DNA from: Octopus bimaculoides
Taxonomy: Eukaryota
Length of the DNA: 64,000 nucleotides
Assembly: GCF_001194135.2 (NCBI RefSeq)
Contig: NC_068982.1
Location: forward strand, 98,951,021-99,015,020
Direction of reading: 5' to 3'
Numbering within the stretch: the first letter of the stretch is position 1; every line of letters starts with the position of its first letter. The notes under the pieces were generated by a model. The model saw nothing but the letters and a program-made list of their open reading frames with translations. It was not told where the DNA came from and made no database searches. Shown in pieces: positions 6,801 through 60,200 of the stretch. Made by a program: the position numbers and the translations under genes.

Positions 6801-7038
6801 TAACATTTACTAATAACTACATTGTTAAGGACTGAGCTGACATAGGACATGCCACAACAGAAAGACATGACAGGAACAACATAGAGAAATAGTCATATCT
6901 AAGAGAGCTAGGTAACTACAGTCACTAAAGAGAAGTAGACACTGTTATTTTAATCTGCAACTATATCCATATACTGAGTGAGATGACATTTTACATGCCA
7001 CAACATAGAAAACAACATGAACAGCAAGAACAACATGG

Positions 7039-7098
<60 letters not shown>

Positions 7099-7578
7099 TA
7101 TATATATATATATACACACATATATACATATATATATATACATATATATATATATACATATAAATATATATATATACACATATATATATATACATACATA
7201 TATATACATATATATATACATATAAATATATATATATACACATATATATATACATACATATATATACATATAAATATATATATATCCATACATACACATA
7301 TATATATACATACATACATGCACATATATATATATATACATACATATACATATAAATATATATATATACATACATATAAATATAAATATATATATATACA
7401 TACATATACATATAAATATATATATATACATACATATACATAAATATATATATATACATACATACATATACATAAATATATATATATACATACATACATA
7501 AATATATATATATACATACATACATAAATATATATATATACATACATACATACATACATTTATATACATACATACATA

Positions 7579-7609
<31 letters not shown>

Positions 7610-19520: not shown

Positions 19521-19666
19521 NNNNNNNNNNNNNNNNNNNNNNNNNNNNNNNNNNNNNNNNNNNNNNNNNNNNNNNNNNNNNNNNNNNNNNNNNNNNNNNN
19601 NNNNNNNNNNNNNNNNNNNNNNNNNNNNNNNNNNNNNNNNNNNNNNNNNNNNNNNNNNNNNNNNNN

Positions 19667-37700: not shown

Positions 37701-40700
37701 TAAGAAGAAATCAGAAAAAAATGTTATATTTCAACATAAATCAATAACAAATTGATTAATCAGAATTAAATACCAGTGCCATTAGATCTTTGATTTAAGT
37801 ACATATAAAATATTGGATCTCTACCATTAGAACTTGTATTGATAAAATTAAAAGTTTATTGCAATAAAAATATTGCAGTTAAATGAAAATGCCTATTGAA
37901 TATAGAAATTAGAAATAAATAACCACAAAATTTAAGAAGCTTTTGCTATAGATTCTGAAATAGATTAAAATTTATTCAGAATATTGGTTAAAAGTATTTA
38001 ATATGTCTTGCTATGTGTACTCATAACTATTAGTACCAAAGATAAAATCAATGATTTATGCACTAAATATTCGGATATATTTTCACCTAACTTAGATCAC
38101 TGTATAAAAATGCACAATTTGACTGAGTCCAAATGAAAAATTGAGTTATTGACAGGCCAGCCAGACCATTTCTATTGTCAAAAGTCAAAATTGGTAAAAG
38201 AATTGGAATGTGAAGTACAGAATTATACACTGGAACTGAATGATCTACAATCATTGCCTTTTGGAAGCTGAATGTCAAAGCTCACATTTGTGGAGATTTT
38301 AAAGTCACTATCAACAAATCAAACAACAACACTTAATGCTTGTACATGAACTATTTCATAAATTGGAGAATTGGAAGACAAAAAAAAAAAAAAAAAAAAA
38401 AAGACATGTTTATAGGTGAAGTTAACAGAAAAATCACAGCAATTTCTTATGACAAATACCCCTTTCAGTTTTTATAAGTACAAACAAATGCCACTAAAAA
38501 ATTCTAGTAGTCTTGCTATACTTCTATATTTCAATGTCTTGCCAATCAAACGTTATCAAGAATAAAACATTGTGCAGCATATCTGAATGATACCATTGTC
38601 ACCATATGATGGATGAAATATTAGCATTTCTTTCAGAATGAATATTATTACAAATTCATTAAGAACCTTATGCTAGTGTCAATGTCAATGAAATAGAATA
38701 TACCATTCAAATGGCCAAGTGATTAAGGTCATAGAGCTCATGCATTTCGATGAACATTTGCCATTAATTGTGGTAGTAAATGTATCTATCACCAGTTGGA
38801 ACTGGAATATTTTTGTTTCAGTGTGAAAATGGAATTGATCATCCTTTAGCCCATGCATCTAAAATACTTAATACATATCAACAATGATATTTGCAAATAG
38901 AGAAAAAGGGATTATTTACTATATTTGATTTTCATAACTTTATATGATTCCCTCAGAGAAGACATTTTGAATTAATCCCTAATTACAAGCTGCTAGTACC
39001 CGAATTATCACCTGATTATTGGTTTTTATGTGCCAATGACTATAACATTTGGGTAATTCTATTGCCCTCATATAAATATTCAGTTTAATACATAAAACTT
39101 TGAAGTAACATGAACATACTGCAGCATTATAAAAACAGATTACAATTTTGAAGAAATCATATTCTGTCTAAATTTGAAATACATCAAATTATCGAAGGTT
39201 TTCAAGGTTTGCTAGTTAGTACAAAAGAAACAGAATCACATATGAAGCCATGTATCTATATTATTCAAATAGCCAGAAAAACTAAAAATTTAAGAGAGTA
39301 TTTGTAAAATGAGAAGTGTTAGTTATCATAGGAATTCATTAATTTTGTAGTCCAATTTTCCCAAACTAATTCTGAAAATATTACAAAGTAAAATTTTGAC
39401 TCAACTGCATGAAAATAATTGGGGAATGGCTCCATATGAAACAAATGTGTTACCTAAACTGCTACTGGTTGAAATTGCAATCTGATATGAATTTATAATA
39501 GCTAAATCATGTCTGATATTTAAATCAGTTACATGAGAATGGTCAGAAACCTCTGAATTATGACAATAAATACATAATCAACCACACTGGACCATTTTCT
39601 GATAAAGTATGGCTTACTGCCAATGATTAATTCTCAGAATGTCCTAAAATTCAATGATCTAGGCTTGTTATTATATTATGTCATATTAATTTGGGCTGAA
39701 AATTAAGTTTAGTGAACACAAGCCTATAAGATACTCAGCTACTTAAACGAGTAGGTTGTTCAGTTTAATGAACAACCAAATGCTCATTGTGAAAACTGAC
39801 AGTGGATCTGGCTTCATCATATATATACCAGGCAATGTGGTAATGACATGATTAAGTTACTCTGGGAGACAAAGTTGCAACAAACTGCTAATATATAATC
39901 AAAGGCAAAGAGGAATCATTATTATGATTATTATTACCACCGACTCTAAAAGAGTTGGTATTTGGATTTCTTGCACTTTATGTTGGTTAATTCCTACTAT
40001 ACTTTTAATGGTAAAGTCTTCTATATTGAAGTTTTTCTGTTAGAACTACTAATGATTTGTACACTGCAAAAGTATTCAAACTTAGATTTTAATCCAAAGT
40101 CCTGGTTACTGCTAGTTTGAAGAACTGTATAAAATACTCACTTCTACATAGGCAGCAATATTATCTGCAACTCTTGGAGGGGGTTGCCAATCCTTTGGTG
40201 GTTTACCCATGTTTTCAGTAACAAACCAATTGAGTTTGGGCCATCCTAGAAAAGAATAACAATATAAAACATGAAATTCAGATGACAGCTAACAATAATT
40301 AAGAGGTACATTACAGATGGTTTCAAATGTTATAGTAATGTATGGAAAATTAAGTGATGAGAGAAAACAAGAAGTTGAGATGATTGTCATTTTCTAGAGT
40401 TGGAGATTATCATTCTGTAATGTACAACCAGTAAATCCTGGTTCAAAGAAACTAATCTTTAGTCATAGTCCTGTACGTTATTCTGAATGGCCGTTCTCTC
40501 TCTTCCTCTTCCTGTCGAATGTGCATGCTCTTTATATCAACGTTATTTGCATAACACATTCAATTGATATAAATTTGGCGAAATTATTCTCAAAATGCTG
40601 ATGATAATGAAAGAAATAGTGTACAAAACTATAGTTGATAAATTATCTTACCTTTGAAAATAATTACTTCCCCATTAGGCGTTTTAGGTAATGCTTTATT

Positions 40701-43700
40701 ACAAGCTTCTGATGTAAGGGCCCAGTTAACATTAAGGTTACCCAAAAGGAATCCAATTCCTAACCCACCAGCATCCTGAAATGAAATGACAGAGTATTAA
40801 GTAGAAAATAAAGGAAAACATGAAAATATCATTAAAGGACTAAATCTGTAAAAATTATACACCTGTGAAATAAGTAACAAAAAATATAATGAAGAGTGAA
40901 AGTCTTTTTTTTTTAAAGGGACACTTAATTGTAGATGTTATTTTACATATATAACTGGTACTCAATCATGTTACAAGCAAATCAGAGAATTTTAACAGCA
41001 TTATGTAGTCAGCTGGTTTCCATAAGACATTTTTGTTTTTTACCAACAATACTGAAATATTATATAAAATTAAATGGAAGTAAGAACCATATTTTAAATA
41101 GCAGCGGTGTAAAGGAGAATATTCAGAGATCTTCGAAGTTTATAAAAAAAAGGATCTCTGTGACAATGAATAAAGTAAATTTAGTAACATAATTAGTATC
41201 CTTTAACCCCTTAACATTTAGACCTCTCTGTTATATGTAATGCTTATTTATTTACATTGTTTCTAATTAATCAGACATTATCTTGTAGCTTCGAAATTTT
41301 GAGTATGTGATTAAATATTTTTAGAATGACATTGAAAGGAAAGTGTTATAGATAGAATATTTGGGTTGCATATCGCCATTTTAAATGTTAAAGGGTTTGA
41401 AAGAAATTAATAGACTGTAAAGGATTTTTAAAAAAATGGAAACAAGGATATGCAGCATAACAATCAAATAAACACTCAAACATTTATTAAAACCTTTCAT
41501 AATAAAATATTACCCAAGAATTGTCATGAAACTGAATTGAAGGACAAAGGCTATTATTGTGTATACTTAAGTATAGCTCTGTGTTTAAGAAGTTTCCTTC
41601 ACAACTATGTGGATTTTGGTTCCATGCTGTCAAATGACACCTTGGGAAAATGCCTTCTACTATAACCTCTGGCTGATTAATGCTTTGCAAGTGTAATTTG
41701 ATTGGTAGAAACTGTACAAAAGCCTGTCATATACATGGCTATGTATTCTTTCTGTATCTCTTCTCATCAATACTGTTTTTGCAGTAGTAGTTTTGCTTAT
41801 GTTTTCCAGTAGTGGTTTGACATTCAAAGGTGCAAAGTAAAGTTCTTCACTTAAAAAACCTGAAAGAGGTGAGGTCAGTAAAGGCACCTGACCATAGAAT
41901 ACTGCCTCAAAAAGTTGCAACCAACTTATACCAGTATGGTAACAAAAAGAAACCTATGAAAATGATGATTAAGCATAACATTATGAACAAAATACTGAAA
42001 AACACAGTACTCTGCACTGAAAGTATTTCAACCACTTTAAAAGTAAATAAATACAATAAAAAAGAATTATATTTTATAAATGTAATGAATGATCAAAAAT
42101 ATCACCAAAGAAAATCTTTCTAAGAAACTAAATTAGAAAGGATCATAAGTGCGAGTTTAATATGGATGATGAAAAGAGAATCATTTGGAAATTATTTGGC
42201 TACGGCATCTTTTTTTTTTTTATACACTTATTACTGCAAAATAAATAGAAAAATAATTTTAAAAATTTTCGATTTTAAAAATATTTTCTTAAATAACTGA
42301 GTATAACCTAAAAACAAAAGCATTTATCATTTTAGTTATGATTGGTAAAATTTATTTTATATATCAGAGACAAAAGGTAATTAAAAAAATATAGAATGGG
42401 TATGTTTATATATGTTGCTGAATTTCAGAATTGAACTATTGAATTTTAAATCAATGTAAAATTCTATTTTGGTAAGATACATTTGGATACTATCACTAAT
42501 ACTTGCAGACTGTTCCTTTCATCTTTATGTCAAGACAATCACAATCAATTCACTTTCTGTCTGGTTCTATAAGCAAATGTATTGATTATAGAAAACCCCC
42601 AAATTTTGGAGCATTTTACAGAAAACTTCTTTTTAATTTTTACTTGTTTCAGTCATTGGACTACAGCCATGCTGGGGCACCACCTTGAAGAATTGTTAGT
42701 TGAATTGACTCCATTACCTGTTTTTTTTAAAGCCCGTTACTTATTCTTTCAGTCTCTTTTACTAAACTGCTAAGTTATGGGGTCATAAAGACACCAACAA
42801 GTGTTGGGGTTTGACAAACACACACACAGATATATGTATATCTTTCAGTTTCTATTTATCAAATTCACTCGTAAAGCTTTGGTCAGTCTGAGGCTATAGT
42901 AGAAGACACTTGCTCAAGGTTCCATGCAGTGAGAATGAATCTGCAACCATGTGGCTGGAAAGCAAGCTTCTCACCACACAGCCATGCCTGTGCCTATTTT
43001 TTTTGCTTTTTTTTTTATTTTTTGGAATTTTATTCCTGATATACTTAGTTTGGTTGCCCCTTATATCAGCCATATCTTTCAAAATTTACAGCATAAAAAA
43101 AAACAAAACAAAAAACAAAACTGAAAATCTATTTGTAGTTACATTATGTCTGAAACCAAGATAAGCATAGAACACTTAACCATAGATCTGCTGGATCAGA
43201 GCTGATCTGCGATTAAACATTAACATATCTGTTGTGAATATATAGTAAGAGACATTTATTGTGTGACTGTGTGTATTCAAACTCACACACTGGTTTGTAG
43301 TACAATAAAAATTTAATAAAAACTTTTCTACATACACTCCACATCATCTCTTTATTTCTTATCTGCTTATGGTTTTAATATATTGTTGCTCTCCTCTCCA
43401 ACTTTTTAATGTACTGCCACTTATCACCTCCTCCTCCCTGACCCACACCTTTATTCATTTACCTTACCCCAAACTGAGATTCACTACTGACCACATTGCC
43501 ACCCATGTTCACCATTCACTGCATTTACCTCTGTCCTTATCTTAATCAGCTGTCATTCTTTCCACATTTTTACAAACCTACCCACCCAGTCATCCTCAAT
43601 TCTGTCACTTTTCAATTTTTATCCACTTTCTTGTGTCTTGAGAGTATGCACTTTTTTTCATCGTTCCTCACTTTTCTACTGAGATAGCCATGTATCTCCT

Positions 43701-46700
43701 CCACAGCGAGACACCTGTTCCTGTCTCTATATCATACTTTAGCTTCTCAACACCTGGCACAAAGCCATCTCCCTCAATTCTGTACTCCAGTCAACCAAAG
43801 GGTCTTGTTAATGACCTCACTAGTACTGGTGCCAAAAAAAAAAAAAAAAAGCACCTAGTACAGTCTGTAAAGCATTTGGCATCAGGAAGGGCATCCAGCC
43901 ATAGAAACTTTGTCAAAGCAGACATCGGAGCCCAATTTAACCTCTGACCCATCACAGCCTGCCAAACTATCTGACCTATGTCTACTTGGTAGAATCTGTT
44001 AAATCAGTTTTAGCAGATGTCCTTATTCAGTGACTGGAAACTGTAATCAGGCTATAACTTTATTTTTGTGTATTTTGTTTTTTAATATTTTGTACCTGGC
44101 ATATTTTATGATAGAAAAACAAACAGTACTTCTAAAGTGAAGTCAGATATAGCCCACAAAAGTAACACAGTAATATAACATGAGGGTTGCAAAAGGAGGA
44201 AGTGATGTTATATGATATTTAATAAGTATGTGGTTGTTATATCGAGTAATCTATCTTCTCTTATTACACTCAGCTTTTTACCATTCACTACTGCACATAA
44301 ACCAGATAAACAAGTTGCATAAAAGGATGCACATTAGCTACCCTTTGATGCTTGTATGTCTTACATGGAGACATGACAAAACTTGTCTATAAACAGTAAA
44401 AATAATCTATATAGAGTCTGCTTTAAGGCAGATACTAGATGTAATTCACTGGCAGAATTGACATTTTACAAAAACTGAGAAACACAACATAAGAACAGTT
44501 TGGTTGTATTTCATAAAATGAAGAGCAAAATGACAATAATACTGTTAACAGAAAGGTCACCCAAGAGTTTATGTTAGCACATTTTACTAACATACAAACA
44601 AATTATCTTCATCAGGATATTAAAAATAAAACAAAAACAAGCTTGTTAAGCTAAATGTTATATTTTCTTGAATAACAAAGTTCACATTAACTTGGCCAAT
44701 CATTAACCTCTTATGGGCCAAGTTGCTGTTAATGGAAATAGAATGTCTAAGTAATTATGCCAGTCTAAATGGTGTAATCATGTGGTGAACTAATCTTGAA
44801 ATATTGTGAAATACGCAAAATTGAGTTGACAACAGTATGCACAAGCATGTATACAATTTAACGTATATTGTATGAGATTGTGAAAAAATGTAGTACAATA
44901 GAGGTGAACCAGATCTAGAAGTATTCCAAAAATTACGAAATATAAAAACATTAATAACAACCAAGAAATGAGAAAATATGTAGCCTTGTAACATTTCCTT
45001 TCAGTTCAAGTTGAACACTCTAAACTCATTCAAAAGCTTACAAATAATCTGATCTATGTCTTTCTCCTCTTGAACAATGATGGTGAGAAGAAGGAAACAA
45101 AAACTTTACAGAAGAGGGGTGGGGAGTATGATAATTTTGCAAATTATTAAGATTTAAAAATACAAATAATGCAGACTTATTGCTTAAATCACAACATATA
45201 ATTTCTTTTGTGTTGAGTTAGTGAACTTTTAGGATTTCAGATAGAATGAGAGAAGCAAATACAAAACAAAGAGAAGTCACACTTTGAAACAGCTAAAATA
45301 ATTCCTACAAAATAAATTTCAGGAAGTTGATGGTTTTATCTTTTAACATTTACAGCTTATTCCTGGCCTGCTTTGCTTACTGCTATATTCTGTCTATGAA
45401 AGATCATTCCAAAAATATGAAATGGGCAAACCTAGTCAAAATGAGAAGATTTCAATTAACAGCAATGGATTTCAATTACTTTATGGTAAGGGAAATAAAA
45501 AAAAAAAGACCATCAGAAAGTCTGAGATAATTACTGAATGGAATATAAAAGGTGAAATGTCTTTCATCAATGACAAGAACAAAGATGCACCATCAACTGA
45601 CCAGAGAGAGAGAGAGAGAGGGAGAAAGGATAGTGTAAATTTAACTGAGGGAGAAAAGCTGCAGTTGTCAGTTCACCGATGGAGACTGACTGCAGTGTTA
45701 GTCTTTTCTTTTTTCATAGTGAGGTCCACAACATAGTGCTGAAAGGATTAGTAGATCACAATGTGAACATTCTTTTCTTGATCTCTTGAAGGTAACTGAG
45801 TAATTAATTGCCTGGGAGACAGTGAGGAAGTAGTCGAGTACTTGGTTAACACTGACCCTAAAATGATAAAAGGCAAAGTTGGACTCACAGCACAGAGAGT
45901 TGGGATAAATACCAATTTGCTGCCTTAGAGAAACGTTATAGTGCCAGTTGACTTCAAAGAAAGACTTCTGTGTCTGCTGAGCTGTTAGAGATAGGCTGTA
46001 ATGTCAACTGATCTGAGACAGACAAGTTGCAGCACCAGTTGACTTAAAAACAGCTGACCCACATAACAATGAATGCAGTCACCTACATTTTATTGTGATC
46101 CTATAAAAAGAGATCTATGATCTTGAAATAATAGAGTCTTTCGACCCTTTTGATACCAAACCGTCTGAAACTGCCCCTAGCTCTGTAGTACAAATGTCTT
46201 GTTTTCAAAAGTCCTGAATTAAAATCTTCCACCAAAACTTAGTCACAATTTATGTTCCAAACACTAGCTTAATGATAACTAAGTTATTTTACTAAATTCT
46301 TTGTTACATTTAAAATTAATTGAAAAAACACAGAGTATCTCAACAGAGATATGGTAACAAAAGGGTTAAACAGGATAGAAAATTCATCCATATACAGCTT
46401 TACTAATGGCATTTAGATATGTTACAAGGAAAAATGTTCTAGAAATACAGACTAAATTCTTTCCAACAAAGATGATATCAGCTATTGCTGAATAATGTAT
46501 TAACATATCGCAATAGGGATAACAATCATTATATATGCAATTACTTTGGTTTTCAAAGGATTTTGAAGTTATGGATAAAGTGATAGAAATAAAAATATAG
46601 GCACTTGTTAGGGACAGGAGTCAAATAATGGTATTAAATGGTTATTGTTATCAAAATTAGTGGATGCAAAAATTTAAAAGTATAAAAATTATCTGCTATT

Positions 46701-47228
46701 TAGAAACAAAACTCTAGATACTGATATCAAAATATCTACTCAAGTCACAACACAGTGACTCTAATTATTACAGAAATCCAAAGAAAAGTGCACTAGCTAT
46801 AGAGACCATAGTAGGTGTATGGTCATAGCAGTTGTGATAGTGGATGCTGACTGTGCTGGTGGTATTGTATGCTGATACTGAAAATGAAGATGATACTGAG
46901 GTATATGTTTGTGATTGTATGTAAATGAGTGTGTGTGTGTGTGTGTGTGATATACATATTCACAAAGGAAGCCATTTATGGTAATCAAAGAAGTTATCAA
47001 AATCACTGGGTCATAAACTTAATTCAAAATTCATATCAAATTATCTGTTTATTAGGATGAAGATCTAGATGATGTTACATACTATGCTTAATGTAATCAA
47101 CCAGTTACTGTTAATGAAGGCTTCATCAAAGTTGAAAATGTTAACACTTCAAGAAATAGATAAAAAAGTGAATTTGAATGTTTTTGTGTATTCTTTAAAT
47201 GAGTAAATTGGCTCTTGTACCATTTAAT

Positions 47229-47283
<55 letters not shown>

Positions 47284-49803
47284 GTTCATCTATACTGTAC
47301 CTGATTATCTGATATATATATATCGGGTAATCAGGTACAGTATAGATGAACACACAGAAATTCATTAAGATAATAGTATATAACAAAATAATGGCAGGTA
47401 AGAAATAACAAAATGAAATAAAGCATTGCAAAACAAAGTTTTAAAATATATCATGAAGAAATAAATACTGTAATGTAGAAATTTTAAAATACTTCAGTGA
47501 AAACATTTCTCACTAGGGGTCTAAATCTGGATAATAAAACAGTAGCAACATCAATATCATAACATACAAGTTGTTATTGAGTAGGTAGCTGAAGCAATAC
47601 TAAGAACAGACTATATCACTACAATAAAAAAAAAGGACATAATAAAGTACTGGTGATATACACAAGAAGGAGATAGAGTACTGAAGAAAGTTTTTGGAAG
47701 ACGGATATATATACACATCTATCATGCAAAAACATCTAGTTTTCACAGACAACTATAATAAGCTACTATGTGGGTGTTCATACTACACTATTAGTATTGC
47801 ACCCCAGCCGGGAACAGCAAGCATCTTCAAGAATGTTCTAAACTAAATGCTACTGTAGTTGTATTACTGAGATAAAAAGATGTAAAGACAAATTAGTTTA
47901 CCAGAAACAATACAAATACACACATACACACACAGTGATTATAATTTCTAATTATGCTTTCTCAAGGTTGAAAAAAGAGGTAACTTCTAAAGATAGAAAC
48001 TTAAATTTTCAACCTATAAAGATGTAGTAAGACAGAATATTTTCTAACTACTACTCAAAATCCTTTGATAATAAAATCAATTTCTTTAAGATAGTATATA
48101 ACTAAATGACAAGTGCGTTACTTGCTTGGCTGTATTTTTACAGACACTAGTGAGACAAAAAAACTCAACAAGAAGCTGAATTAAATTTCTTGATGCTATA
48201 TTTAAAGTCACAGCAATAAAAAATTATTGTGGCTTGATGTTGCAAACAAAAGTTTAGACAGAGCAGGATAGTTGGTGTATGATAGGCCAATATGGGTTAG
48301 GCAGGCCTAACCACAATGACTACAAGGGAAATTTTGCTCTGGGTTTGGCACTGCTGTGTAATGGATTTTTCTTTATTCTCCTTCTGTCTTTGAAGGAGAA
48401 AACAGCAAAAGATATGTAGGCAGGCTTCATTGTGAGAGGCTACAGTACAACAATGGCAATGGTCAATATGACAGGAACCAAGAGATTTCTCTAGAGAGCA
48501 GCAGTACCTATTCTTTGGTTCTTCTTATGTCATAGTGGTCAGTGGCAACTTAGCAAAACAGTACAATACTGAGTAGGCAATAATCTGCCATCCTGAAAAT
48601 ATGCCCTGACCAACAATGTCCTAATGCTGGTGATGTCTGCCTATTTCCACAACTTCAATATTAGTAAAAAAAAATGCCAATCTAGATACTGAGAATAATA
48701 TTTTAAAGTTAAAATAATAGACAGGGAACAACACTGGAAAATACGAAAACTAAAAGAAGCAGCACATATGCTAGGACACAACAACCTCCTAAGCAGACCG
48801 AGTGCAGATATGAATAGCATATGGGAACCGGTATTGAGGAAGGATAGAAAAATAATAGATTTATAAGCCCTAAAATTCACTCCATAATTGCCCACGGGCA
48901 TATGGCGTAGTGGTTAAGAGCGGGGGCTACTAACCCCAAGATTCCGAGTTCGATTCACGGCAGCGACCTGATTAATAATAGTAATAATAATAATAATATA
49001 ATAATAGTAACATCGTTAGGAATGNNNNNNNNNNNNNNNNNNNNNNNNNNNNNNNNNNNNNNNNNNNNNNNNNNNNNNNNNNNNNNNNNNNNNNNNNNNN
49101 NNNNNNNNNNNNNNNNNNNNNNNNNNNNNNNNNNNNNNNNNNNNNNNNNNNNNNNNNNNNNNNNNNNNNNNNNNNNNNNNNNNNNNNNNNNNNNNNNNNN
49201 NNNNNNNNNNNNNNNNNNNNNNNNNNNNNNNNNNNNNNNNNNNNNNNNNNNNNNNNNNNNNNNNNNNNNNNNNNNNNNNNNNNNNNNNNNNNNNNNNNNN
49301 NNNNNNNNNNNNNNNNNNNNNNNNNNNNNNNNNNNNNNNNNNNNNNNNNNNNNNNNNNNNNNNNNNNNNNNNNNNNNNNNNNNNNNNNNNNNNNNNNNNN
49401 NNNNNNNNNNNNNNNNNNNNNNNNNNNNNNNNNNNNNNNNNNNNNNNNNNNNNNNNNNNNNNNNNNNNNNNNNNNNNNNNNNNNNNNNNNNNNNNNNNNN
49501 NNNNNNNNNNNNNNNNNNNNNNNNNNNNNNNNNNNNNNNNNNNNNNNNNNNNNNNNNNNNNNNNNNNNNNNNNNNNNNNNNNNNNNNNNNNNNNNNNNNN
49601 NNNNNNNNNNNNNNNNNNNNNNNNNNNNNNNNNNNNNNNNNNNNNNNNNNNNNNNNNNNNNNNNNNNNNNNNNNNNNNNNNNNNNNNNNNNNNNNNNNNN
49701 NNNNNNNNNNNNNNNNNNNNNNNNNNNNNNNNNNNNNNNNNNNNNNNNNNNNNNNNNNNNNNNNNNNNNNNNNNNNNNNNNNNNNNNNNNNNNNNNNNNN
49801 NNN

Positions 49804-49838
<35 letters not shown>

Positions 49839-51872
49839 GATATATATATATATATCAGTTACTTAATAACCAGTAGGTAGGACACTCCAACTGATGTTAA
49901 TCCAATCTAGCATTTTAAATGTGACTCCACTGCTGCAGCCTCCACCATCATTTTAAGTCCACTTTCTATGCTAGCATTGGTTAGACAGTTTGACAGGATT
50001 TGACAGGTTAGTGGACACTATCTTGCTCCAATGTGTTAGTTTTATCATGGTTTCTATGGCTGAATGCCAATTGCTCTATAGAGTGCACTTTTTATTTTGT
50101 GGAACCAGCACTGGTGAGGTCACCAGCAAGTCTTCACTATGTCAAGAGGAAGAGTATATTATGCACTCATCTTCAATCAGCAGTACACAATCGATGACAA
50201 TGGTTTATGTATAACATTTTGAATGATTCCTTTTAAAAGCCTTTGCTCCTCTTTAAAAGTATATTTAAGTTAGCTTTGCCCCAATATAGTATGAGTTTTG
50301 GTATATGAATGTTGTGTATTCATGGCAAGTAAATCTGAGACAATCCAATGCTTTTGGAGCTGTGCCCAGGGAGAATTTGAACTCAACACCAATGAAACAC
50401 TCATCAGTTAAACAGTTCTACTACTGCTTCCCACATTAAGTTGTATAATCACTTGGTATGTACATATAGCTACTTATTCATTTGTAAGTGTTTTGGCAAT
50501 AGTGCACAGCACTGGAAGCAGAAAAGCAAACAAACCTTTCAGCCAATATGCTGACATACTACCAAATTGGACACTGATTTTCAAATATGTGTACACACGT
50601 CTGCATCTGCATGCACATATGCATTTTTGTGAGCATAAAAGGTGCATTATAAGTTTCTGATTCATTCAAATCTATATTTTCATTTAATACTAAGTAGCTA
50701 AACTATGATTAAGCTGTGAATATGTTATTTATGGGAGGATGTGTTATGCAAAAATGAAATAAGAAAGCAAAGCTAATTTATTATACAAAACTCTTAATCA
50801 GTCTGGGAAGATTAGACAAAATTATAATTCAATTATTTAACAGGAAGTGAAATTCTATACTATTCTCAAAAGGAAATCAAATACAATTTTCACAAAATTC
50901 AAAAATTAATGCAAATGAGCTAATCTAGTTTGAAGATGAACTAATTTAGCCATAACATAAGTGAAAAATTGAGACAATATCAATCAAGGGTTAGTAAATG
51001 AAACAAAATCTGTCATGATTATAGCTGAGAAAATATCACTGACTAAAGAAACTAAAGCATAAGTTTATTCATGTTAAAAGTACTGGCAACAGAATGGAAA
51101 AACAGACAAGCAAGCACACAGTCGTATTGATGAAATATTTTAATGTAGTAGAGGGAAAAAAAAACCTGATAGACAACAAGTACATGGATATGATATTGAG
51201 CAACTATGGTGACAGGCAAGAGAATAATGTGAGGAGGATATTAAAAATAGATGATATTAATGACGAGAATGATAATAGCATATAAAAGAAAAGCAGGCAA
51301 GAATGAAAATATGAATTTATATACAGATAGGGCATAACATAAAAATAAAAAAAATAAAACATCAGCATGCTTGGAAGGAAATAATTTTATACGTACACAT
51401 ACATACACATGGACGGAGAGATGGATGGACATATAGACAGACAGACAGACAGACTGACAATTGTGAGCAGATAGCAATGGCAAAGACATGGTTGCAACCA
51501 CTGGGTGTCCATGCCAAATTTTGAAACTCACCTGTACTTTGCTTTTAGTGGAATCATTATAGACCTTCTCTTCAAACTGTACAAATGGAGAAAAGCAGAA
51601 GGGCAAGCCCCAATTCAGAAAGGACACACATTTAGAGATGATATCTTACACAGCCACTGCATACCTGCTAGCTTTTGACATACAGATGTAAACACATATG
51701 ATTGCAGTGAATGGAAATGGCAGAGAAAGAAGAAAAGCAGTTGCAAATCAAGGAGCAGAGGCAGACATAATGATAAATAATCTTCGTAAGTAAGTTGTAA
51801 GTTGTTGATTACATAAATAAATAAAGGTTTATGTTGCTTTCATGTCAACAGTCCCCTTAAAGCTATATGAGA

Positions 51873-51916
<44 letters not shown>

Positions 51917-54900
51917 ATTATATGTATTNNNNNNNNNNNNNNNNNNNNNNNNNNNNNNNNNNNNNNNNNNNNNNNNNNNNNNNNNNNNNNNNNNNNNNNN
52001 NNNNNNNNNNNNNNNNNNNNNNNNNNNNNNNNNNNNNNNNNNNNNNNNNNNNNNNNNNNNNNNNNNNNNNNNNNNNNNNNNNNNNNNNNNNNNNNNNNNN
52101 NNNNNNNNNNNNNNNNNNNNNNNNNNNNNNNNNNNNNNNNNNNNNNNNNNNNNNNNNNNNNNNNNNNNNNNNNNNNNNNNNNNNNNNNNNNNNNNNNNNN
52201 NNNNNNNNNNNNNNNNNNNNNNNNNNNNNNNNNNNNNNNNNNNNNNNNNNNNNNNNNNNNNNNNNNNNNNNNNNNNNNNNNNNNNNNNNNNNNNNNNNNN
52301 NNNNNNNNNNNNNNNNNNNNNNNNNNNNNNNNNNNNNNNNNNNNNNNNNNNNNNNNNNNNNNNNNNNNNNNNNNNNNNNNNNNNNNNNNNNNNNNNNNNN
52401 NNNNNNNNNNNNNNNNNNNNNNNNNNNNNNNNNNNNNNNNNNNNNNNNNNNNNNNNNNNNNNNNNNNNNNNNNNNNNNNNNNNNNNNNNNNNNNNNNNNN
52501 NNNNNNNNNNNNNNNNNNNNNNNNNNNNNNNNNNNNNNNNNNNNNNNNNNNNNNNNNNNNNNNNNNNNNNNNNNNNNNNNNNNNNNNNNNNNNNNNNNNN
52601 NNNNNNNNNNNNNNNNNNNNNNNNNNNNNNNNNNNNNNNNNNNNNNNNNNNNNNNNNNNNNNNNNNNNNNNNNNNNNNNNNNNNNNNNNNNNNNNNNNNN
52701 TATTTGTCTGATAATTAGAGTGGAAAAAATGTATTTGCATATTTGTAAGAGGATTTATGAAAGTAAATTGAATATTTGCTGCAGTTATTTGTTGTATTTC
52801 GCAAATCTGCTCATACACTCTCTCTGAGATGGGTTACCTAATGAATAATAAAAATGGTGGTGGTTATGTAATATACCCATCATTAAAGTTTTTATTTTAA
52901 AGCAATGATGAAAATACTCTGCCTAAAGACATTCATTTAAATAACACAAGATATTTGTTGTAAGTGCAGTGGTGTATTAATTCTACATTTAGCACTAGTA
53001 TCTCACTGGATCTTAAGAACCCTGGAGAAATAAAAAAGCAAATTTAATTCTGTGCAAGACTTAAACTTGGATTCAAGAAGGGATACTGAGACATGTTGTA
53101 AAGTATTAGGTTGACTCTGTCAACTGTACCATAGTTTACATAATGACAAAAAGGTTTTCTATGCTTTGGCATAAAACTCTCAAATTTGGTGCAAGGGTTG
53201 TAGCCAATATAATTAAACCCAAAATTCAACTCAGCCATAAATATTTTACTAACCTAGATGGATGAATGAAAACCCAACACCAGTGAGATATGAAGTCAGG
53301 ATGTAGAAAGATAAATCCACAAGATGTTTTATCTGCAGACTTCCAATTCAGCCATCCTACCCTGATATTAGCTAATTTCTGGATATTGTTTCTCATAATG
53401 AATTCTTCACTTTTCAATTTTTTCACAATAAATATATTATGAAGACACTGAGGTTTTTTTTATAATTAAAAAAAATATGGAATATTAAGCTAGCCTTTTC
53501 AGAACATTTAAACATTTATGGTAAAATAAATTATTGAAATAAATAGAAAAAAATATGGTTAATTTTCTTGATGTTAGATCAAAAACATTCAGAAGAAATT
53601 TTAATTTTGTTGAAGCATATTCTCTGGAGTGTATTCATAAACTAGATATTTCATTTGATATTACTGAAACAACTCTGATGACTATCTCAAGAGAAGTAAA
53701 ATGAAGATGCTCCTTTCATTTGGTTTCAAAGATGATAGTTCATGCTTTTGTTATATGCAAGCATATGAAAGGTGAAAATTAATTTAAATTCATATTTAAA
53801 TAAACAAGGCAATTGTTTTGAAAATACATTCATAATTAGTATATGACAATGACGAAGCAGTATTTTGATAATGTTATTGATGAGAACATTTTTGCTTCTT
53901 ATTGTCTCATATTTCAAAATAAAAACTAAACACAACTATTTCTAGAAATACTAAATAAAGAAAAATGTATAGTGAAAACATATGGATACACGAAACACAC
54001 AAAGGTGATATTTCTATGATGTATAGACATTCATTGAACATTTTACTTTTGCCAACAGTGGCAGTTTAATAAATTTCTTGATAACAAATTGCGATTAAGT
54101 GAAAAATGGTAAAAGTTGAGATCTTTTACACACATTACAGTAAGAATGAAACTCTTGTTATAATGAATATCATACTATGTTCTGAGTGTCAAAAAGTGTC
54201 CATTTTTTAAATAAACATTTTACAATGGCCATGTCAGCTTTATTCATAAAAGCTTCATCAACATTGTTCATGAGTACGAAGAAAATAGTACAGGTATGAA
54301 TTTATATTTAATTCTTTATTGCTTACAAGGGGCTAAACATAGAGGGGACAAACAAGGACAGACAAAGGGACTAAGTCGATTACATCGACCCCAGTGCATA
54401 ACTGGTACTTATTTAATCAACCCCGAAAGGATGAAAGGCAAAGTCGACCTCGGGGAAATTTGAACTCAGAATGTAGCGGCAGACGAAATACCGCTAAGCA
54501 TTTCACCTGGTGTGCTAACAATACTGCCAGCTCACCACACGAATTTATATTACCGTCATCAACATCACCATCATTAAATTTATTTATTAATTCAAGCTGT
54601 GTGTTCTCAACAGCATCATATTGCAATGGTGTGAAATCTGAGATCTTAAGAAGTTTTATTTTCAAGATGATCAAATAATAAAATGCCACCTGCACCCACT
54701 GCCATAAGGTGAGGCTAAAGGAATGTCAAGGATCAAAATCTATTTGATTATAGGACTTATATACATTATGAAGAAATCAAAGATGAGAGTATAAAATGAA
54801 AATTTCCAAACAGGATAGACATTTTGGAGCTGTAAAAGTCAGATGAAAGTAGCTGGCAGCTTCATTTTATTCCATGCTATTTTATATTCTACATGAAACA

Positions 54901-55539
54901 AACCATAGTTACTATATGAAGAATTCATATATAATTTATAAGATTACTGCTCATATATTCCTTCTACAAAGAAACTAGTAAATTAGTATCATAAATTAGT
55001 TGGGTTTTCAAAATGACACAAAAATAAGCTATTTGATAGAAATGTAAGAATTTTATATTGTAAAAGGACTCAAACTTAATTTTTAATCCACTTTCAGTAA
55101 AGGTCTATATTTGTATAGTTTCATGATTTCCTTAGCCATTAAAGAAAAAGTAAAAGTAAAGTGTGTTGTCTTGTTAACTTAAGTAAAATCAGAACTGAAG
55201 AGAAAGTAGTGAATGGTTAGCAACTGACTGAAGGGCCTAGTTGCAATTAAGGTATTTAATTATGTGCCTATGCCACCTTTCCTCTTTATGACTGTGTTAA
55301 TGTTCACTTTTCTGTCTTTTAGTGTTTTATTTTGTTTACTGTGCATGTACTTTCATTGGTGTCTTTTTTTTTTTCTTGACATATTTCTGCATCTGCCCCA
55401 TTTTTAACCTTTTCTGACGAGTTGTAGCGCAACTGGGCACTGTATACAATAAGCTCATTATTATTTATATTCACCTCTCCAAAAACACTTTTAGTATAAA
55501 TAGGCTGTCATATATATATGTATATATTTATGACAGCCC

Positions 55540-55589
<50 letters not shown>

Positions 55590-56360
55590 NNNNNNNNNNN
55601 NNNNNNNNNNNNNNNNNNNNNNNNNNNNNNNNNNNNNNNNNNNNNNNNNNNNNNNNNNNNNNNNNNNNNNNNNNNNNNNNNNNNNNNNNNNNNNNNNNNN
55701 NNNNNNNNNNNNNNNNNNNNNNNNNNNNNNNNNNNNNNNNNNNNNNNNNNNNNNNNNNNNNNNNNNNNNNNNNNNNNNNNNNNNNNNNNNNNNNNNNNNN
55801 NNNNNNNNNNNNNNNNNNNNNNNNNNNNNNNNNNNNNNNNNNNNNNNNNNNNNNNNNNNNNNNNNNNNNNNNNNNNNNNNNNNNNNNNNNNNNNNNNNNN
55901 NNNNNNNNNNNNNNNNNNNNNNNNNNNNNNNNNNNNNNNNNNNNNNNNNNNNNNNNNNNNNNNNNNNNNNNNNNNNNNNNNNNNNNNNNNNNNNNNNNNN
56001 NNNNNNNNNNNNNNNNNNNNNNNNNNNNNNNNNNNNNNNNNNNNNNNNNNNNNNNNNNNNNNNNNNNNNNNNNNNNNNNNNNNNNNNNNNNNNNNNNNNN
56101 NNNNNNNNNNNNNNNNNNNNNNNNNNNNNNNNNNNNNNNNNNNNNNNNNNNNNNNNNNNNNNNNNNNNNNNNNNNNNNNNNNNNNNNNNNNNNNNNNNNN
56201 NNNNNNNNNNNNNNNNNNNNNNNNNNNNNNNNNNNNNNNNNNNNNNNNNNNNNNNNNNNNNNNNNNNNNNNNNNNNNNNNNNNNNNNNNNNNNNNNNNNN
56301 NNNNNNNNNNNNNNNNNNNNNNNNNNNNNNNNNNNNNNNNNNNNNNNNNNNNNNNNNNNN

Positions 56361-56410
<50 letters not shown>

Positions 56411-57236
56411 CACATATATACAGCAATAAGAAAATGGAGGGGATCAAGAGGTGGTATTCATCAACTTTTAGACATTATATTTTGTCTATTTAGTTATTTA
56501 AAAAAAAACAATTATAACAATATACATACATGTATAACATATTATGCTTTATATATATATAAAAATACCAGTAATTATTCGAACCAAATTCGATGACTGG
56601 CACCCAAGCCAACCTTTCTGGACACTAAACTCTGCTTGCGCAGACCTGTTTGGGCAAGTAGAATATTTTACTTTCTATGTTCGACATTATATATTTTAAT
56701 AATTACTGGTATTTTTATATATGTAAAGCATATTAACTAAATAGACATAATATGTCTAAAAGTTGATGAATACCACCTCTTGATCTCCTCCATTCTCTTA
56801 TTGCCGTATGAATTAAGGATAAAACAGCTTTTTACCCTCACCCATTTATTACATTCAGTAGTGTAATTGCTATGCAATGAAAAAACACTTGTGTATTAAT
56901 AATTGGGTATTCTACCAGCAGTATATTGGATAGATATTATCCCTTAGTTGGTTGGATTCACAACCTCTAACTCGCTTGGAATTTTATATATATATATATC
57001 AATTTAAATAAGAGCTATAACGTGATCCATTGTATAGCTCTTATTTAAATTGATATGCACACAAAATTGTATGATTAACAACCTTTCATATGAGAATTTT
57101 GCTATGTTGATAACAGGTAAAAATATTTTTACCAAATTTTTGGTAGTGATCTATAAATACAAATCATCATCATCATCATCATCGTTCAACGTCCGCTTTC
57201 CATGCTAGCATGGGTTGGACGATTTGACTGAGGCAA

Positions 57237-57271
<35 letters not shown>

Positions 57272-60200
57272 AATATATTAATGCGAGTTCAGAGGGATAT
57301 ATTATCCCGGCGAATACCATGGTAGCTCTCAGTTATGTTCCAGGTTATGGCTAGCCACAAAGGAAATAAATTTTGAGAATGTACCAGTCTCTGTATTCTC
57401 TATCATTATAATTGTTGCATATATTCAAATATATATACAAGTGTACACACACACACACGCGCGCGTGCGTGCATGAAATCCTGAATTTTCAACTTTTTTT
57501 ATACCTTGCAAAAGTAATTATTTGTTTTTGCTTTTCAAGGTATTTCCTTCTGATTTTCAGTGTTTTCTTTTTCTGTTTTTTAAAATTTGTTTCTTCCTCC
57601 AAAATAAGGGTATTGCTAAACTTTTGTGCATTGTAAATATAAAAGAAAGGTCCTTGAAATAAAATCAAAAGAAATAAAAGTAAATAAAATTAATATTTGT
57701 AAATGAAGGAAACCAATTAATACATACTCGTTTTGTGAGAGGGACCTCTACTGGCACTGGTACAACACCAGCAAGAATGCATCCATAAAAAGCACAGCTG
57801 AATGAGATGGGATCATTGTTGGGATACACAAGTGCAACCTAAAAGAATTTAGAAAACATGAAAGATTATTAAATGTTACTACAATGTAAGAAGGAGAGAG
57901 TATCGATTGTGATTCTGATGAAATTCATTATAAGTCTTACATTAGTAGAGGTAATGAATGGGAAATTATAAAAATATTGATTTAATTTCCACTATTGGAA
58001 GATGTTTAGAGTGTATCTGATTAACATAACAGTTAACTCTTCACAAATGAAATAAATAATGTTTGAATATCAAACATTGAAAGAAATATAACAAATCCTT
58101 CTATCATTATATACTTTTTCAGATGTTTAGAAGCTGAAAAAAAAAAAAAAAAAAAAAAGAGTTCAGTGATGAATTGAGTTAGATACCAATATTATAAAGC
58201 CCCTTGGTATCAAATGCCATATTTAGTGTCATGATGACAGTATTACTAGCATCTTTATGACTATTTATCATTACAGCGCCAACAAGGAATTGCTCTGATA
58301 ACTTAGGTGACACAATTTAGAGGGGATGGTTTAGCCCTGACAGAAAATGGCAGAGATAACTTTTTGCAAATCCACATTTACATCGCAAACAATGGCCGTC
58401 TTTGATATCTTAGATGATACAGTGTAAAAGGAACACTTTAGACCTAGCAGACAGCACAAGATGTCATGTCCATTTAACATTACATCCCACACAAAGAAAT
58501 AGTCTAGTTGGGGACACTTTAGTCTTGAGAGTCAAGATCCTTAATGTTCATGGCAATGTGAAATGCACCCAGTCAAAAATGAAGGAAATGAAGAGATGTG
58601 GATGCTGCATGCAGGTAACTTGTTTTGGAGAGCGGATATTCCAAATAACTGATACAAGGTAAAAGTTCAATCAGAGACAACCTTAATTAGGCCAGTGATA
58701 TAATAAATGGCACTCAGTACACATTGCAAAGTGAGTGGTAGTAAGAGAGTATCCATCAGTAGAAACTGTACCAAAAACTGGGATGTATGAACAAGACATA
58801 CAGTCTACCTAAAAAGACTAACTCTAACTAAAAACTGAAATAGTGTAGAGACTAATTCCTCAAGTGATGGAATTCTTCATAGTTAAAAAGTGCTTGTGGA
58901 GAGGGGAAAAATGATGTTTGATGTTACCACAAAATTATTTGAAATAGCTACAAACAGTAAAACATGCTCACTCTATCACCGCTTTTGATTCCGATTTCTC
59001 CACTCTTTTGACCAACTTTGTTCAATAAATTGTAGGCTATTTTATAAGTTCTGCTTAATAGTTTTCCTGTAAAAATTGAAATAAATTATATGAAACTCAC
59101 ATAAACAGAGAAAATTATTACAAAATCTTTAAGAGATTGAAAGTACATTATCATTTAATTAACTAAAATCATTTTTCAAACTGAATCAATTTATCAGACA
59201 GAGTGACATGTAATAAGAATAAGAAAACATAAAAATACAAGGATTAAAATTTGCAATACTCGTAAATTGTTTGTGAAATTCATCAAGAAAAAATGCTCTA
59301 ATTTCAATTAATCATTCCAAGTTCCAATCAAAAATTAAAAGATGTATTTCATATAGTATAGTTGCAGTAAAGTCAAATGATTTAAACACATTATCTCATA
59401 GTACTCCTTTCATTCAACCTCCTACTGTCCCCCTATTGTACCACTCCTTTGTACATCGGTGCAGTGTGCTTTTTACTTTTGATTTAAGTCTTTTTTACTT
59501 TACTTCTTTTCATACAAAAGAACTGTATTTCCTCAAGCTATGATGAAGGCAATTTATCTTGAAGAATGGATTTCCAAAAGTGGAGCTCTCTATTAATTGC
59601 TGGCAGTATGATAAACATATCTGACTCTGTCAATTGGGGCTTGCAGCACTAAGAAAATAGTTGCTAAACAAAAGATCTGTTTACTCCAAGCCAAATAGAA
59701 ACAATTGTTAAACAAATGGCAATAAGTAGATACAGCTCTGTAGCAAGTTAGTCACAGTCAATGGTGATCATATTTTCCAGTTGAATCCTCTTTGTTTGCT
59801 AATAATCAACATCACTGCAAAGGTGCATAAATATTTACAGGAAACTTCAGATATGAGAAGAACAAAACTAAAAATAATAACGGTTCATTGTGACAGTTAT
59901 CAACAATTAACCAAACATGGTAACTTTAAATGTTAATAACAAATTGTCACAAGAATAAAGTTAGATTAGCTACAATGCAAACAATAAAGATCTTCAATAT
60001 CTAAATTCTTACCATAAGTCAAATTATATGTGGGCTTGCCATTTTGGTCAAGTACTGTAATTGCATTGGCCTTATAAGTAGATGAACCATATCTCTGAAC
60101 AGCAGCTTCTAAACTCTTTGGTAAACCCGAAGGAATCTGTAAGACATCAAAAAATATGGGACTGAATTATAGATACGTTTTAATTTAACCCTTTTGTTAC

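What the first reader, a model, noticed from the sequence alone, without database searches (positions are those of the whole stretch)
51532..51576. Candidate lineage-specific 45-nt in-frame microexon hidden in the 17-kb DIP2 intron
Seen: on the gene strand, ...cttgcccttctgcttttctccatttgtacag|TTTGAAGAGAAGGTCTATAATGATTCCACTAAAAGCAAAGTACAG|GTGAGT. It has a 21-nt pyrimidine tract, a perfect CAG|GTGAGT donor, 15 codons without a stop, and phase 0-0, the phase of the host intron (TKR|DAG). Inclusion would insert [15 protein letters not shown] into the first FAAL-like domain, where human and fly DIP2 as I recall them have no insertion. UGC motifs lie at -21 and -29 of the acceptor and a GCAUG just downstream of the donor. 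Established: UGC near the 3' splice site marks SRRM4/Srrm234 (eMIC)-driven neural microexons, and (U)GCAUG is the Rbfox motif. Inference: a neural-regulated, possibly cephalopod-specific DIP2 isoform.
Basis: partly seen in the sequence, partly recalled or inferred. Interest (0 to 1): 0.7.

Follow-up and report, generated by a model that had tools for sequence, protein, structure and literature searches.

The report
Unverified candidate microexon in DIP2 intron
A 45-base stretch inside a long intron of the DIP2 gene looks like a small, nerve-cell-type alternative exon more than chance predicts, but no RNA or related-genome data were available, so whether it is ever used is about an even bet.

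Summary
The sequence is exactly as described. On the minus strand, ...ttctccatttgtacag|45 nt|gtgagt lies at 51576..51532. It is in phase 0-0 inside the 16,952-nt intron between DIP2 exons ending PLTKR (57728) and starting DAGGLG (40775).

For the exon:
- It is the best in-frame pseudo-exon of 60 nt or less on either strand of the window. Its splice-site score beats 26 of 29 real DIP2 exons here.
- 3% of simulated introns, or 7.5% of simulated whole intron sets, reach that score. None of 200 simulated sets also carried two of its three regulatory features: two UGC, a 68-nt AG-free zone, and GCAUG at +18.

Against:
- Its composition is intron-like: GC 33%, and a codon score in the bottom 5% of real coding windows.
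- The frame is open for 128 codons, so "no stop" means little.
- There is no branch-point consensus.
- About 100 other DIP2 proteins and four other mollusc loci, whose introns are only 0.2-1.5 kb, have nothing like it.

No cephalopod protein, transcript or genome could be reached, so expression and conservation remain untested.

The insertion point is a disordered surface loop. Gastropods carry a 5-residue insertion in the same loop.

Verdict: a plausible lineage-specific cassette exon (about 0.45), barely ahead of an inert pseudoexon (about 0.42).

The parts
51532..51576 (-). Candidate 45-nt cassette exon, phase 0-0, encoding [15 protein letters not shown]. It begins with a 10-nt purine run, GAAGAGAAGG.
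   Evidence: Sequence read. It occurs once in the window. It has the best splice-site pair in the window. A mixed purine run of 10 or more is found in 2.5% of intronic and 5.4% of coding 45-mers. GC is 33% and the codon log-likelihood is -0.35, which is intron-like.
51577..51644 (-). 3' splice region: a 68-nt AG-free zone, a 19/21 pyrimidine tract (51583..51603), UGC at 51595-51597 and 51603-51605, and acceptor cag. No CUAAY or YUNAY branch-point match was seen by eye in the zone. The best are cuaaA and cugaA.
   Evidence: Acceptor weight-matrix score is 3.05 bits, against a median of 2.77 for 30 real acceptors.
51526..51531 (-). 5' splice site gtgagt after exon-terminal CAG (CAG|GUGAGU).
   Evidence: It scores 9.68 bits, the best donor-like site in the 17-kb intron, and only 1 of 30 real donors scores higher.
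51510..51514 (-). GCAUG (Rbfox-type core) at intron positions +18..+22, in the context ugGCAUGga.
   Evidence: GCAUG lies within 30 nt of 3.2% of intronic GT sites and of 1 of 30 real donors.
57728..57838 (-). Upstream constitutive DIP2 exon ([10 protein letters not shown]...[10 protein letters not shown]). Its donor CGA|gtatgt is weak (0.45 bits).
40652..40775 (-). Downstream constitutive DIP2 exon ([25 protein letters not shown]...IIFKG), with acceptor ...tttcatttcag (5.6 bits).
40776..57727 (-). Host intron, 16,952 nt, phase 0. It is the longest intron of the gene in this window and contains three assembly gaps.
   Evidence: The orthologous intron is about 0.2-1.5 kb in four other molluscs.
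51929..52700 (.). Run of N (assembly gap) 353 nt upstream of the acceptor, bordered by an (AT)n tract at 51864-51928. The sequence context further upstream of the candidate is therefore unknown.

Best explanation
The 45 nt are a splice-competent, frame-preserving cassette exon. It arose inside an expanded intron in this animal's lineage and is included in a fraction of DIP2 mRNAs.

Proposed mechanism (inferred, not shown):
- A consensus 5' splice site (CAG|GUGAGU) recruits U1 strongly.
- An average acceptor sits behind a long AG-free, pyrimidine-rich zone with two UGC. This makes 3' site use depend on an activator of the Srrm234/SRRM4 (eMIC) type.
- A GCAUG 18 nt into the downstream intron can add Rbfox-type enhancement.
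- Inclusion would therefore be highest in neurons.

The product would carry 15 hydrophilic residues ([15 protein letters not shown]) in the flexible surface loop between a beta-strand (VPVPVEVP) and the following helix (GxGIGFLLG) of the first FAAL-like domain of DIP2. The catalytic core would probably be untouched. The likely effect is a change to a surface or interaction site, not to the fold.

What is shown: sequence anatomy, rarity against local nulls, and loop location in a homologue model. What is inferred: actual splicing, tissue specificity, and the factors involved.
For: - Its splice-site pair is the best on both strands of the window and beats 26 of 29 real exons of the same gene.
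- Its donor is the best in the intron.
- A real constitutive 42-nt exon of this gene (16446..16405) has much weaker sites, 5.9 against 12.7 bits. Small exons are therefore spliced in this gene.
- Joint null: 7.5% of simulated intron sets reach the score, and 0 of 200 do so with at least 2 of 3 motif features.
- The UGC, long AG-exclusion-zone and pyrimidine-tract features match the published cis-code of eMIC-dependent exons (PMC8797185, read).
- It preserves the frame, has no stop, and carries a purine-rich enhancer-like run.
- The insertion point is a loop with pLDDT below 50 between strand 360-364 and helix 380-389 in an AlphaFold model of the Elysia homologue.
- Other molluscs tolerate insertions at exactly this junction. 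Elysia has GGGSN and Bulinus has SGSSN. A metatranscriptome DIP2 contig whose sequence resembles mollusc DIP2 has VSSASW.
Against: - No transcript, junction read, annotation or orthologous sequence supports inclusion. None could be reached.
- Composition is that of the intron. GC is 33%, against 44% for coding sequence. The codon log-likelihood sits at about the 70th percentile of random open intronic 45-mers and in the bottom 5% of real coding windows.
- The open frame is not special to the exon.
- No branch-point consensus was seen in the AG-free zone (read by eye).
- Both flanking introns are long (6.1 and 10.7 kb), and exon definition is hard for a 45-nt exon.
- Well-scoring pseudoexons are common in long introns. 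The splice score alone has a window-level chance of about 7.5%.
- The motif arguments are partly post hoc.
- The weight matrix is approximate.
Confidence: 0.45

Rival explanations
1. Inert pseudoexon. A consensus-like donor happens to lie 45 nt downstream of a decent pyrimidine-AG in a long, T-rich, AT-rich intron. It is never spliced, or only at noise level, and the UGC and GCAUG motifs are coincidental.
For: - The splice score alone is reached in 3.25% of simulated introns and 7.5% of simulated intron sets.
- Composition and codon usage are intron-like.
- The frame is open for 128 codons because this strand is poor in A, so stop-freeness carries no weight.
- No branch-point consensus was seen by eye in the AG-free zone.
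- The peptide has no relative, and no DIP2 surveyed has an insertion resembling it at the site.
- Four mollusc orthologous introns lack it.
Against: - The joint occurrence of the top-ranked site pair with two UGC, a 68-nt AG-free zone and GCAUG at +18 was not seen in 200 simulated intron sets.
- Only 3 of about 4200 real pseudo-exon pairs in the window have all three motif features, counting the candidate itself. The candidate is the only pair that combines a score of 6 or more with at least two of them.
- A consensus 5' site with a usable acceptor is expected to be used at least sometimes.
Confidence: 0.42
2. Constitutive lineage-specific exon. In this animal the 45 nt are always included, and the homology-based junction TKR|DAG is simply wrong for this species.
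For: Its splice sites are stronger than those of most constitutive exons of the gene. The upstream exon's own donor is weak at 0.45 bits.
Against: GC content and codon usage are intron-like, unlike nearly all of the 31 constitutive exons. The motif architecture is that of regulated exons, not constitutive ones; real acceptors and donors here almost never carry these motifs. Nothing similar is present in any other DIP2.
Confidence: 0.04
3. The sites belong to something else. Possibilities are an exon of a nested or overlapping transcript, an exonised fragment of a mobile element, or a recursive-splicing stepping stone for removing the 17-kb intron.
For: The intron is long and carries repeats and gaps. 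Long introns in other animals use intermediate splice sites.
Against: - There is no second copy of the region in the window.
- The ORF has no Pfam hit and no protein relative.
- There is no Rfam hit.
- Recursive splicing needs a 5' site regenerated at the junction. CGA|UUUGAA regenerates none.
Confidence: 0.05

Closest known systems
eMIC-domain (Srrm234 / SRRM3 / SRRM4)-dependent neural microexons
   Same: It is short, frame-preserving and encodes a hydrophilic surface insert in a neuronally important gene. It has UGC motifs within 30 nt of the 3' splice site, a long AG-exclusion zone, a pyrimidine-rich tract and a strong 5' site as in mammalian targets (feature list from PMC8797185).
   Different: It is 45 nt, above the strict limit of 27 nt. 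It has only one UCUC and no CUAAY branch point. It has no conservation evidence, whereas classic neural microexons are highly conserved. Neural inclusion and factor dependence are untested.
Rbfox-enhanced cassette exons ((U)GCAUG in the downstream intron)
   Same: A GCAUG lies at +18..+22 of the downstream intron. That is the position from which Rbfox proteins activate inclusion, according to established knowledge.
   Different: The motif is GGCAUG, not the preferred UGCAUG. There is a single copy. Its conservation is unknown. Chance occurrence is 3% within 30 nt.
Intronic pseudoexons (decoy splice-site pairs in long introns)
   Same: It lies deep in a long intron, has intron-like base composition, has no homologue, and is supported by splice-site consensus only.
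   Different: It is better than every other pair on either strand of the window (128 kb in all), and it combines three regulatory features that pseudo-exon pairs here almost never share.
Exon-extension insertions at the same DIP2 junction in other molluscs (found here)
   Same: They add residues at exactly the KR|DAG junction of FAAL-like domain 1. Elysia chlorotica adds GGGSN and Bulinus truncatus adds SGSSN. An unnamed metatranscriptome contig adds VSSASW. The loop is modelled as disordered.
   Different: In the two gastropod loci the insertion comes from a 5' splice site 15 nt further downstream in the upstream exon. In the transcript contig the 18 inserted nt start with a donor-like gttagt, which suggests the same. 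None is a separate exon. They are 5-6 residues long and unrelated in sequence to [15 protein letters not shown].

Membership tests
eMIC/SRRM4-type neural microexon | Length of 3-27 nt (strict) or up to 51 nt (broad), multiple of three | tested here: met
   45 nt, phase 0-0. This meets the broad definition only.
eMIC/SRRM4-type neural microexon | UGC motif(s) close upstream of the 3' splice site | tested here: met
   UGC at -21 and -29. Two or more UGC occur at 8-11% of background AGs and at 1 of 30 real acceptors.
eMIC/SRRM4-type neural microexon | Long AG-exclusion zone and long pyrimidine tract with UCUC repeats | tested here: inconclusive
   The AG-free zone is 68 nt; background is 4-12% at 66 nt or more. 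The tract is 19/21 pyrimidines but has only one UCUC.
eMIC/SRRM4-type neural microexon | Strong branch-point sequence (CUAAY) upstream | tested here: not met
   No CUAAY or YUNAY was seen within the AG-free zone, read by eye. The best are cuaaA and cugaA.
eMIC/SRRM4-type neural microexon | Neural-specific inclusion that depends on the eMIC factor | not testable with these tools
   No RNA-seq or transcripts of this or related species were reachable.
eMIC/SRRM4-type neural microexon | Conservation of the exon and flanking intron among related species | not testable with these tools
   No cephalopod sequence is available. The exon is absent from four non-cephalopod mollusc loci, whose introns are 0.2-1.5 kb.
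Rbfox-activated exon | (U)GCAUG in the proximal downstream intron | tested here: met
   GCAUG at +18..+22, preceded by G and not U. The chance of this is 3.2%.
Rbfox-activated exon | Rbfox-dependent inclusion and motif conservation | not testable with these tools
   No expression or comparative data.
Genuine protein-coding cassette exon (any regulation) | Usable splice sites and frame preservation | tested here: met
   Score 12.73 bits, above 26 of 29 real exons. Phase 0-0, no stop.
Genuine protein-coding cassette exon (any regulation) | Coding-like composition or codon usage | tested here: not met
   Codon log-likelihood is -0.35, in the bottom 5% of real coding windows and about the 70th percentile of the intronic null. 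GC is 33% against 44%. Young exons can fail this test.
Genuine protein-coding cassette exon (any regulation) | Junction-spanning transcripts | not testable with these tools
   Spliced-junction pattern scan of metagenome and metatranscriptome contigs found 0 hits. No hit in the protein searches carries the peptide.
DIP2 (host gene) | Tandem FAAL-like adenylate-forming domains homologous to DIP2 proteins | tested here: met
   The 1163-aa model is 64% identical to a 1603-aa vertebrate DIP2 across both domains. The nearest solved structures are FAALs such as 7r7g, 3kxw and FadD23/32. Domain nomenclature follows PMC9342972.
DIP2 (host gene) | N-terminal DMAP1-binding domain | not tested
   The N-terminal part of the gene lies outside the window. 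The model starts at about residue 340 of the protein.

The most novel reading that the evidence does not exclude
The most novel reading is this. A neuron-enriched microexon was born de novo inside an intron that expanded from about 1 kb to 17 kb in this lineage. It is controlled by the ancient eMIC and Rbfox systems. It remodels the same flexible loop of DIP2's first FAAL-like domain that gastropods lengthened independently by shifting a 5' splice site. That would be convergent tinkering with one surface of a lipid-regulating neuronal protein.
Probability: 0.25. Interest if true: 0.45.

Novelty: new member of a known kind. Interest (0 to 1): 0.3.

Why it matters
DIP2 proteins regulate diacylglycerol lipid pools and neuron morphology (PMC9342972, PMC11100700).

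If the exon is real and neural, it would show three things:
- How the conserved microexon machinery captures new sequence in expanded introns of a large-brained invertebrate.
- That a particular DIP2 surface loop is a regulatory or interaction site.
- That lineage-specific microexons can be predicted from sequence alone.

If it is a pseudoexon, it is an ordinary decoy with no further interest. Either way it concerns one exon in one gene, so its importance is modest until expression is shown.

Tried and rejected
1. Protein search with the spliced 94-aa junction peptide returned only short ORF-type hits of 164 aa or less, none with the insert.
2. Protein search with the 134-aa read-through ORF across the candidate found no relative. 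There is thus no evidence of a coding repeat family or of orthologous ORFs.
3. An exhaustive search of protein cluster representatives found that every full-length DIP2 lacks the 15 residues. Apparent inserts in P0147, P0158, P0006 and P0008 are intron read-through ORFs that begin with V from the GT.
4. A long 656-aa query to catch cephalopod isoforms listed only proteins of about 1144 aa or less. The best was a gastropod at 80%, and no cephalopod appeared.
5. A degenerate codon pattern of the exon, and a pattern matching either spliced junction, both gave 0 hits in JGI metagenome and metatranscriptome contigs.
6. tblastn of the peptide and blastn of the region against other mollusc loci gave noise only. 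tblastn covered L001, L002, L004, L005 and L006; blastn covered L004-L006.
7. A search for a repeat or mobile-element origin found no other copy in the window apart from the adjacent (AT)n tract. There was no Pfam hit and no Rfam hit.
8. Recursive splicing was rejected because the junction would not regenerate a GU.
The Elysia homologue was modelled instead.
10. Literature searches found no paper linking DIP2 to microexons in a relevant way, and none on cephalopod microexons.

Full report
**What is there.**
Read on the minus strand, the window shows ...ggggcttgcccttctgcttttctccatttgtacag|TTTGAAGAGAAGGTCTATAATGATTCCACTAAAAGCAAAGTACAG|gtgagtttcaaaatttggcatgg. The exon runs from 51576 to 51532. 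The 45-mer occurs once in the window. One ends ...CTC ACA AAA CGA|gtatgt at 57728. The next starts ...tttcatttcag|GAT GCT GGT at 40775. The intron is therefore 16,952 nt and phase 0.

**The host gene.**
tblastn with three DIP2 proteins maps about 31 exons on the minus strand across the whole window. I refined their boundaries. The joined 1163-residue product is 64% identical to a 1603-residue vertebrate DIP2 over 1183 columns. The nearest solved structures are fatty-acyl-AMP ligases. This matches DIP2's two FAAL-like domains (PMC9342972). The organism was not identified. The closest available protein is a partial gastropod DIP2, 80% identical in the search and 82% in the alignment.

**Corrections to the observation.**
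- The pyrimidine tract is 19 of 21, not pure.
- The Fox-type motif is GGCAUG, not UGCAUG.
- The reading frame containing the exon is open for at least 128 codons (51627..51241), through what is plainly intron. This strand is poor in A. '15 codons without a stop' therefore carries no weight.

**Is it more than chance?**
I scored splice sites with a simple log-odds weight matrix.
- The candidate scores 3.05 bits (acceptor) and 9.68 bits (donor).
- It is the best of 497 stop-free, phase-0-0 AG..GT pairs of 60 nt or less in the intron. It is also the best of 764 pairs when exon lengths up to about 400 nt are allowed, and of about 4200 pairs on both strands of the window.
- Its donor is the best donor-like site in the intron. 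Its acceptor ranks 21st of 762.
- Thirty real introns of the same gene have a median acceptor of 2.77 and a median donor of 3.87. The candidate's sum exceeds 26 of 29 real internal exons.
- A real, conserved 42-nt exon that I found in passing (16446..16405, [15 protein letters not shown]) scores only 5.9.
- Third-order Markov copies reach the candidate's sum in 3.25% of 400 copies of the intron, and in 7.5% of 200 copies of the whole intron set.

Splice sites alone are therefore suggestive but not compelling.

**Regulatory motifs.**
Against this window's own introns:
- GCAUG lies within 30 nt of 3.2% of GT sites, and of 1 of 30 real donors.
- Two or more UGC in -40..-4 occur at 8% of AGs, at 11% of pyrimidine-rich AGs, and at 1 of 30 real acceptors.
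- An AG-free zone of 66 nt or more occurs at 4% of AGs and at 12% of pyrimidine-rich AGs.

The candidate has all three. None of 200 simulated intron sets had a pair with the candidate's score plus even two of these features. Among the roughly 4200 real pseudo-exon pairs, only the candidate combines a sum of 6 or more with two features.

UGC near the 3' site, a long AG-exclusion zone and a long pyrimidine tract are part of the published cis-code of eMIC-dependent exons. That code also includes UCUC repeats and a strong CUAAY branch point, which are weak or absent here (PMC8797185; sequence).

The exon also starts with a 10-nt GAR-type purine run. Such runs are found in 2.5% of intronic and 5.4% of coding 45-mers.

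Some of this is post hoc. I therefore discount the joint rarity heavily.

**Evidence against.**
- The 45 nt look like intron. GC is 33%, against 32% for introns, 44% for coding sequence, and 33-51% for individual real exons.
- A codon log-likelihood trained on this gene's exons against its introns gives -0.35. That is about the 70th percentile of random open intronic 45-mers and the bottom 5% of real coding windows.
- The flanking introns are 6.1 and 10.7 kb. A 45-nt exon would need exon definition, which is hard at that size.
- No branch-point consensus is present.
- The peptide and its read-through ORF have no relatives, and no Pfam or Rfam family matches.

**Comparative evidence.**
Neither the word-indexed search nor the exhaustive search of cluster representatives found a protein with the 15 residues. 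Full-length DIP2s align the 94-residue query to 79 residues. In 95 of 100 DIP2 sequences the spacing from PVPxEVP to GFLLG is invariant.

The exceptions are informative:
- Elysia chlorotica has KR-GGGSN-DAG and Bulinus truncatus has KR-SGSSN-GRG. In both genomes these 5 residues are a 15-nt extension of the upstream exon, with donor AAT|gtgagt in Elysia.
- A JGI metatranscriptome contig with mollusc-like DIP2 sequence has KR-VSSASW-DAG. Its insertion starts gttagt, which suggests a downstream alternative 5' site.
- One bird model has a 34-residue insert, which is probably a gene-model artefact.

The junction is thus a place where mollusc DIP2 tolerates extra residues, but by a different route and with unrelated sequence.

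The orthologous intron is about 1.2 kb in Elysia and about 0.2 kb in Bulinus. It is about 1.5 and 1.3 kb in two further mollusc-like assemblies, L004 and L005. None contains anything like the exon. The 17-kb intron and anything inside it are therefore specific to the window's lineage.

No cephalopod protein, transcript or genome could be reached. The long-query search listed nothing above 80% identity and no protein longer than about 1144 residues. Pattern scans for the exon and for either spliced junction in metagenome and metatranscriptome contigs returned nothing. Expression and within-clade conservation, the two decisive tests, are untested.

**Where the insert would sit.**
The junction residues 370-379 (KRGGGSNDAG) form a loop with pLDDT below 50, between strand 360-364 and helix 380-389. 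In the alignment to a solved FAAL, the stretch after the conserved 'AGVVxVPxxPP' strand is likewise variable. A 15-residue hydrophilic insert there should loop out at the surface without disturbing the fold. This is inference from a homologue model.

**Verdict.**

Weighing the evidence:
- The window-level chance of the splice score is about 7.5%.
- The motif likelihood ratio is discounted to roughly 3-30.
- The prior for a hidden in-frame microexon in such a gene is modest.
- The intron-like composition counts against it.

I put about 0.45 on a genuine, alternatively included cassette exon. About 0.25-0.3 of that is specifically neural-regulated. I put about 0.42 on an inert pseudoexon, and the rest on a constitutive exon or an element of another transcript.

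If real, it is a new, lineage-specific member of a well-known class, not a new kind of thing.

Noticed in passing
window 16405-16446 (minus strand): A real, conserved 42-nt exon (phase 1-1) encodes [15 protein letters not shown], matching vertebrate GIDLIATFYGCLYAG. tblastn missed it. Its splice sites are weak (0.9 + 5.0 bits), yet the conserved sequence requires its inclusion, so this gene does splice microexon-sized exons.
   Followed up: yes
L001 12117-12263 (Elysia chlorotica RQTK01001388.1); L002 1001-1069 (Bulinus truncatus JAGDYQ010000231.1); L003 (JGI 3300031114 contig): Other mollusc DIP2s carry 5-6 extra residues at exactly the KR|DAG junction (GGGSN, SGSSN, VSSASW). In the two gastropod genomes the upstream exon is 15 nt longer. 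In the transcript contig the 18 inserted nt begin with a donor-like gttagt, suggesting a downstream 5' splice site. This is a lineage-variable loop in FAAL-like domain 1.
   Followed up: partly
L001 12783-13377: The Elysia intron between these two exons contains about five tandem partial copies of the start of the downstream exon (DAGGAGVGFLLG), upstream of the real exon at 13467. This is a tandem duplication of the acceptor and exon start that could offer alternative 3' sites.
   Followed up: no
window 19521-19666, 31429-31438, 49025-49803, 51929-52700, 55590-56360: Five runs of N (assembly gaps), three of about 770 nt. Most are bordered by (AT)n/(TA)n or (CA)n/(TG)n microsatellites. Three lie inside the 17-kb host intron, so 2.3 kb of that intron is unknown sequence.
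   Followed up: partly
window 57722-57727: The 5' splice site of the 17-kb host intron itself is weak (CGA|gtatgt, 0.45 bits), while its acceptor at 40776 is good (5.6 bits). The candidate's donor is far stronger than the site it would compete with.
   Followed up: partly
window 13731-13998 and 36870-37154: Two introns share a 287-nt alignment at 83% identity. ORFs on the minus strand share [10 protein letters not shown], with no Pfam hit. This is probably an interspersed repeat.
   Followed up: partly
window 28516-28842 (plus strand): A 108-aa ORF antisense to DIP2 has weak helix-turn-helix matches (HTH_23 and HTH_38, E about 0.01, below the curated cut-offs). It may be the remnant of a DNA-transposon transposase N-terminus inside an intron.
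   Followed up: partly
window 6945-7782: About 0.8 kb of degenerate TA/CA-rich simple repeat reads as long 'YIYIYVCMY' ORFs in several frames. These spurious ORFs of 200-240 aa are not genes.
   Followed up: no
protein searches: The word-indexed protein search returned only proteins of about 1144 aa or less, and no cephalopod sequence at all. Full-length DIP2 is about 1500-1600 aa. Absence of the insert from these searches says nothing about cephalopod isoforms.
   Followed up: partly
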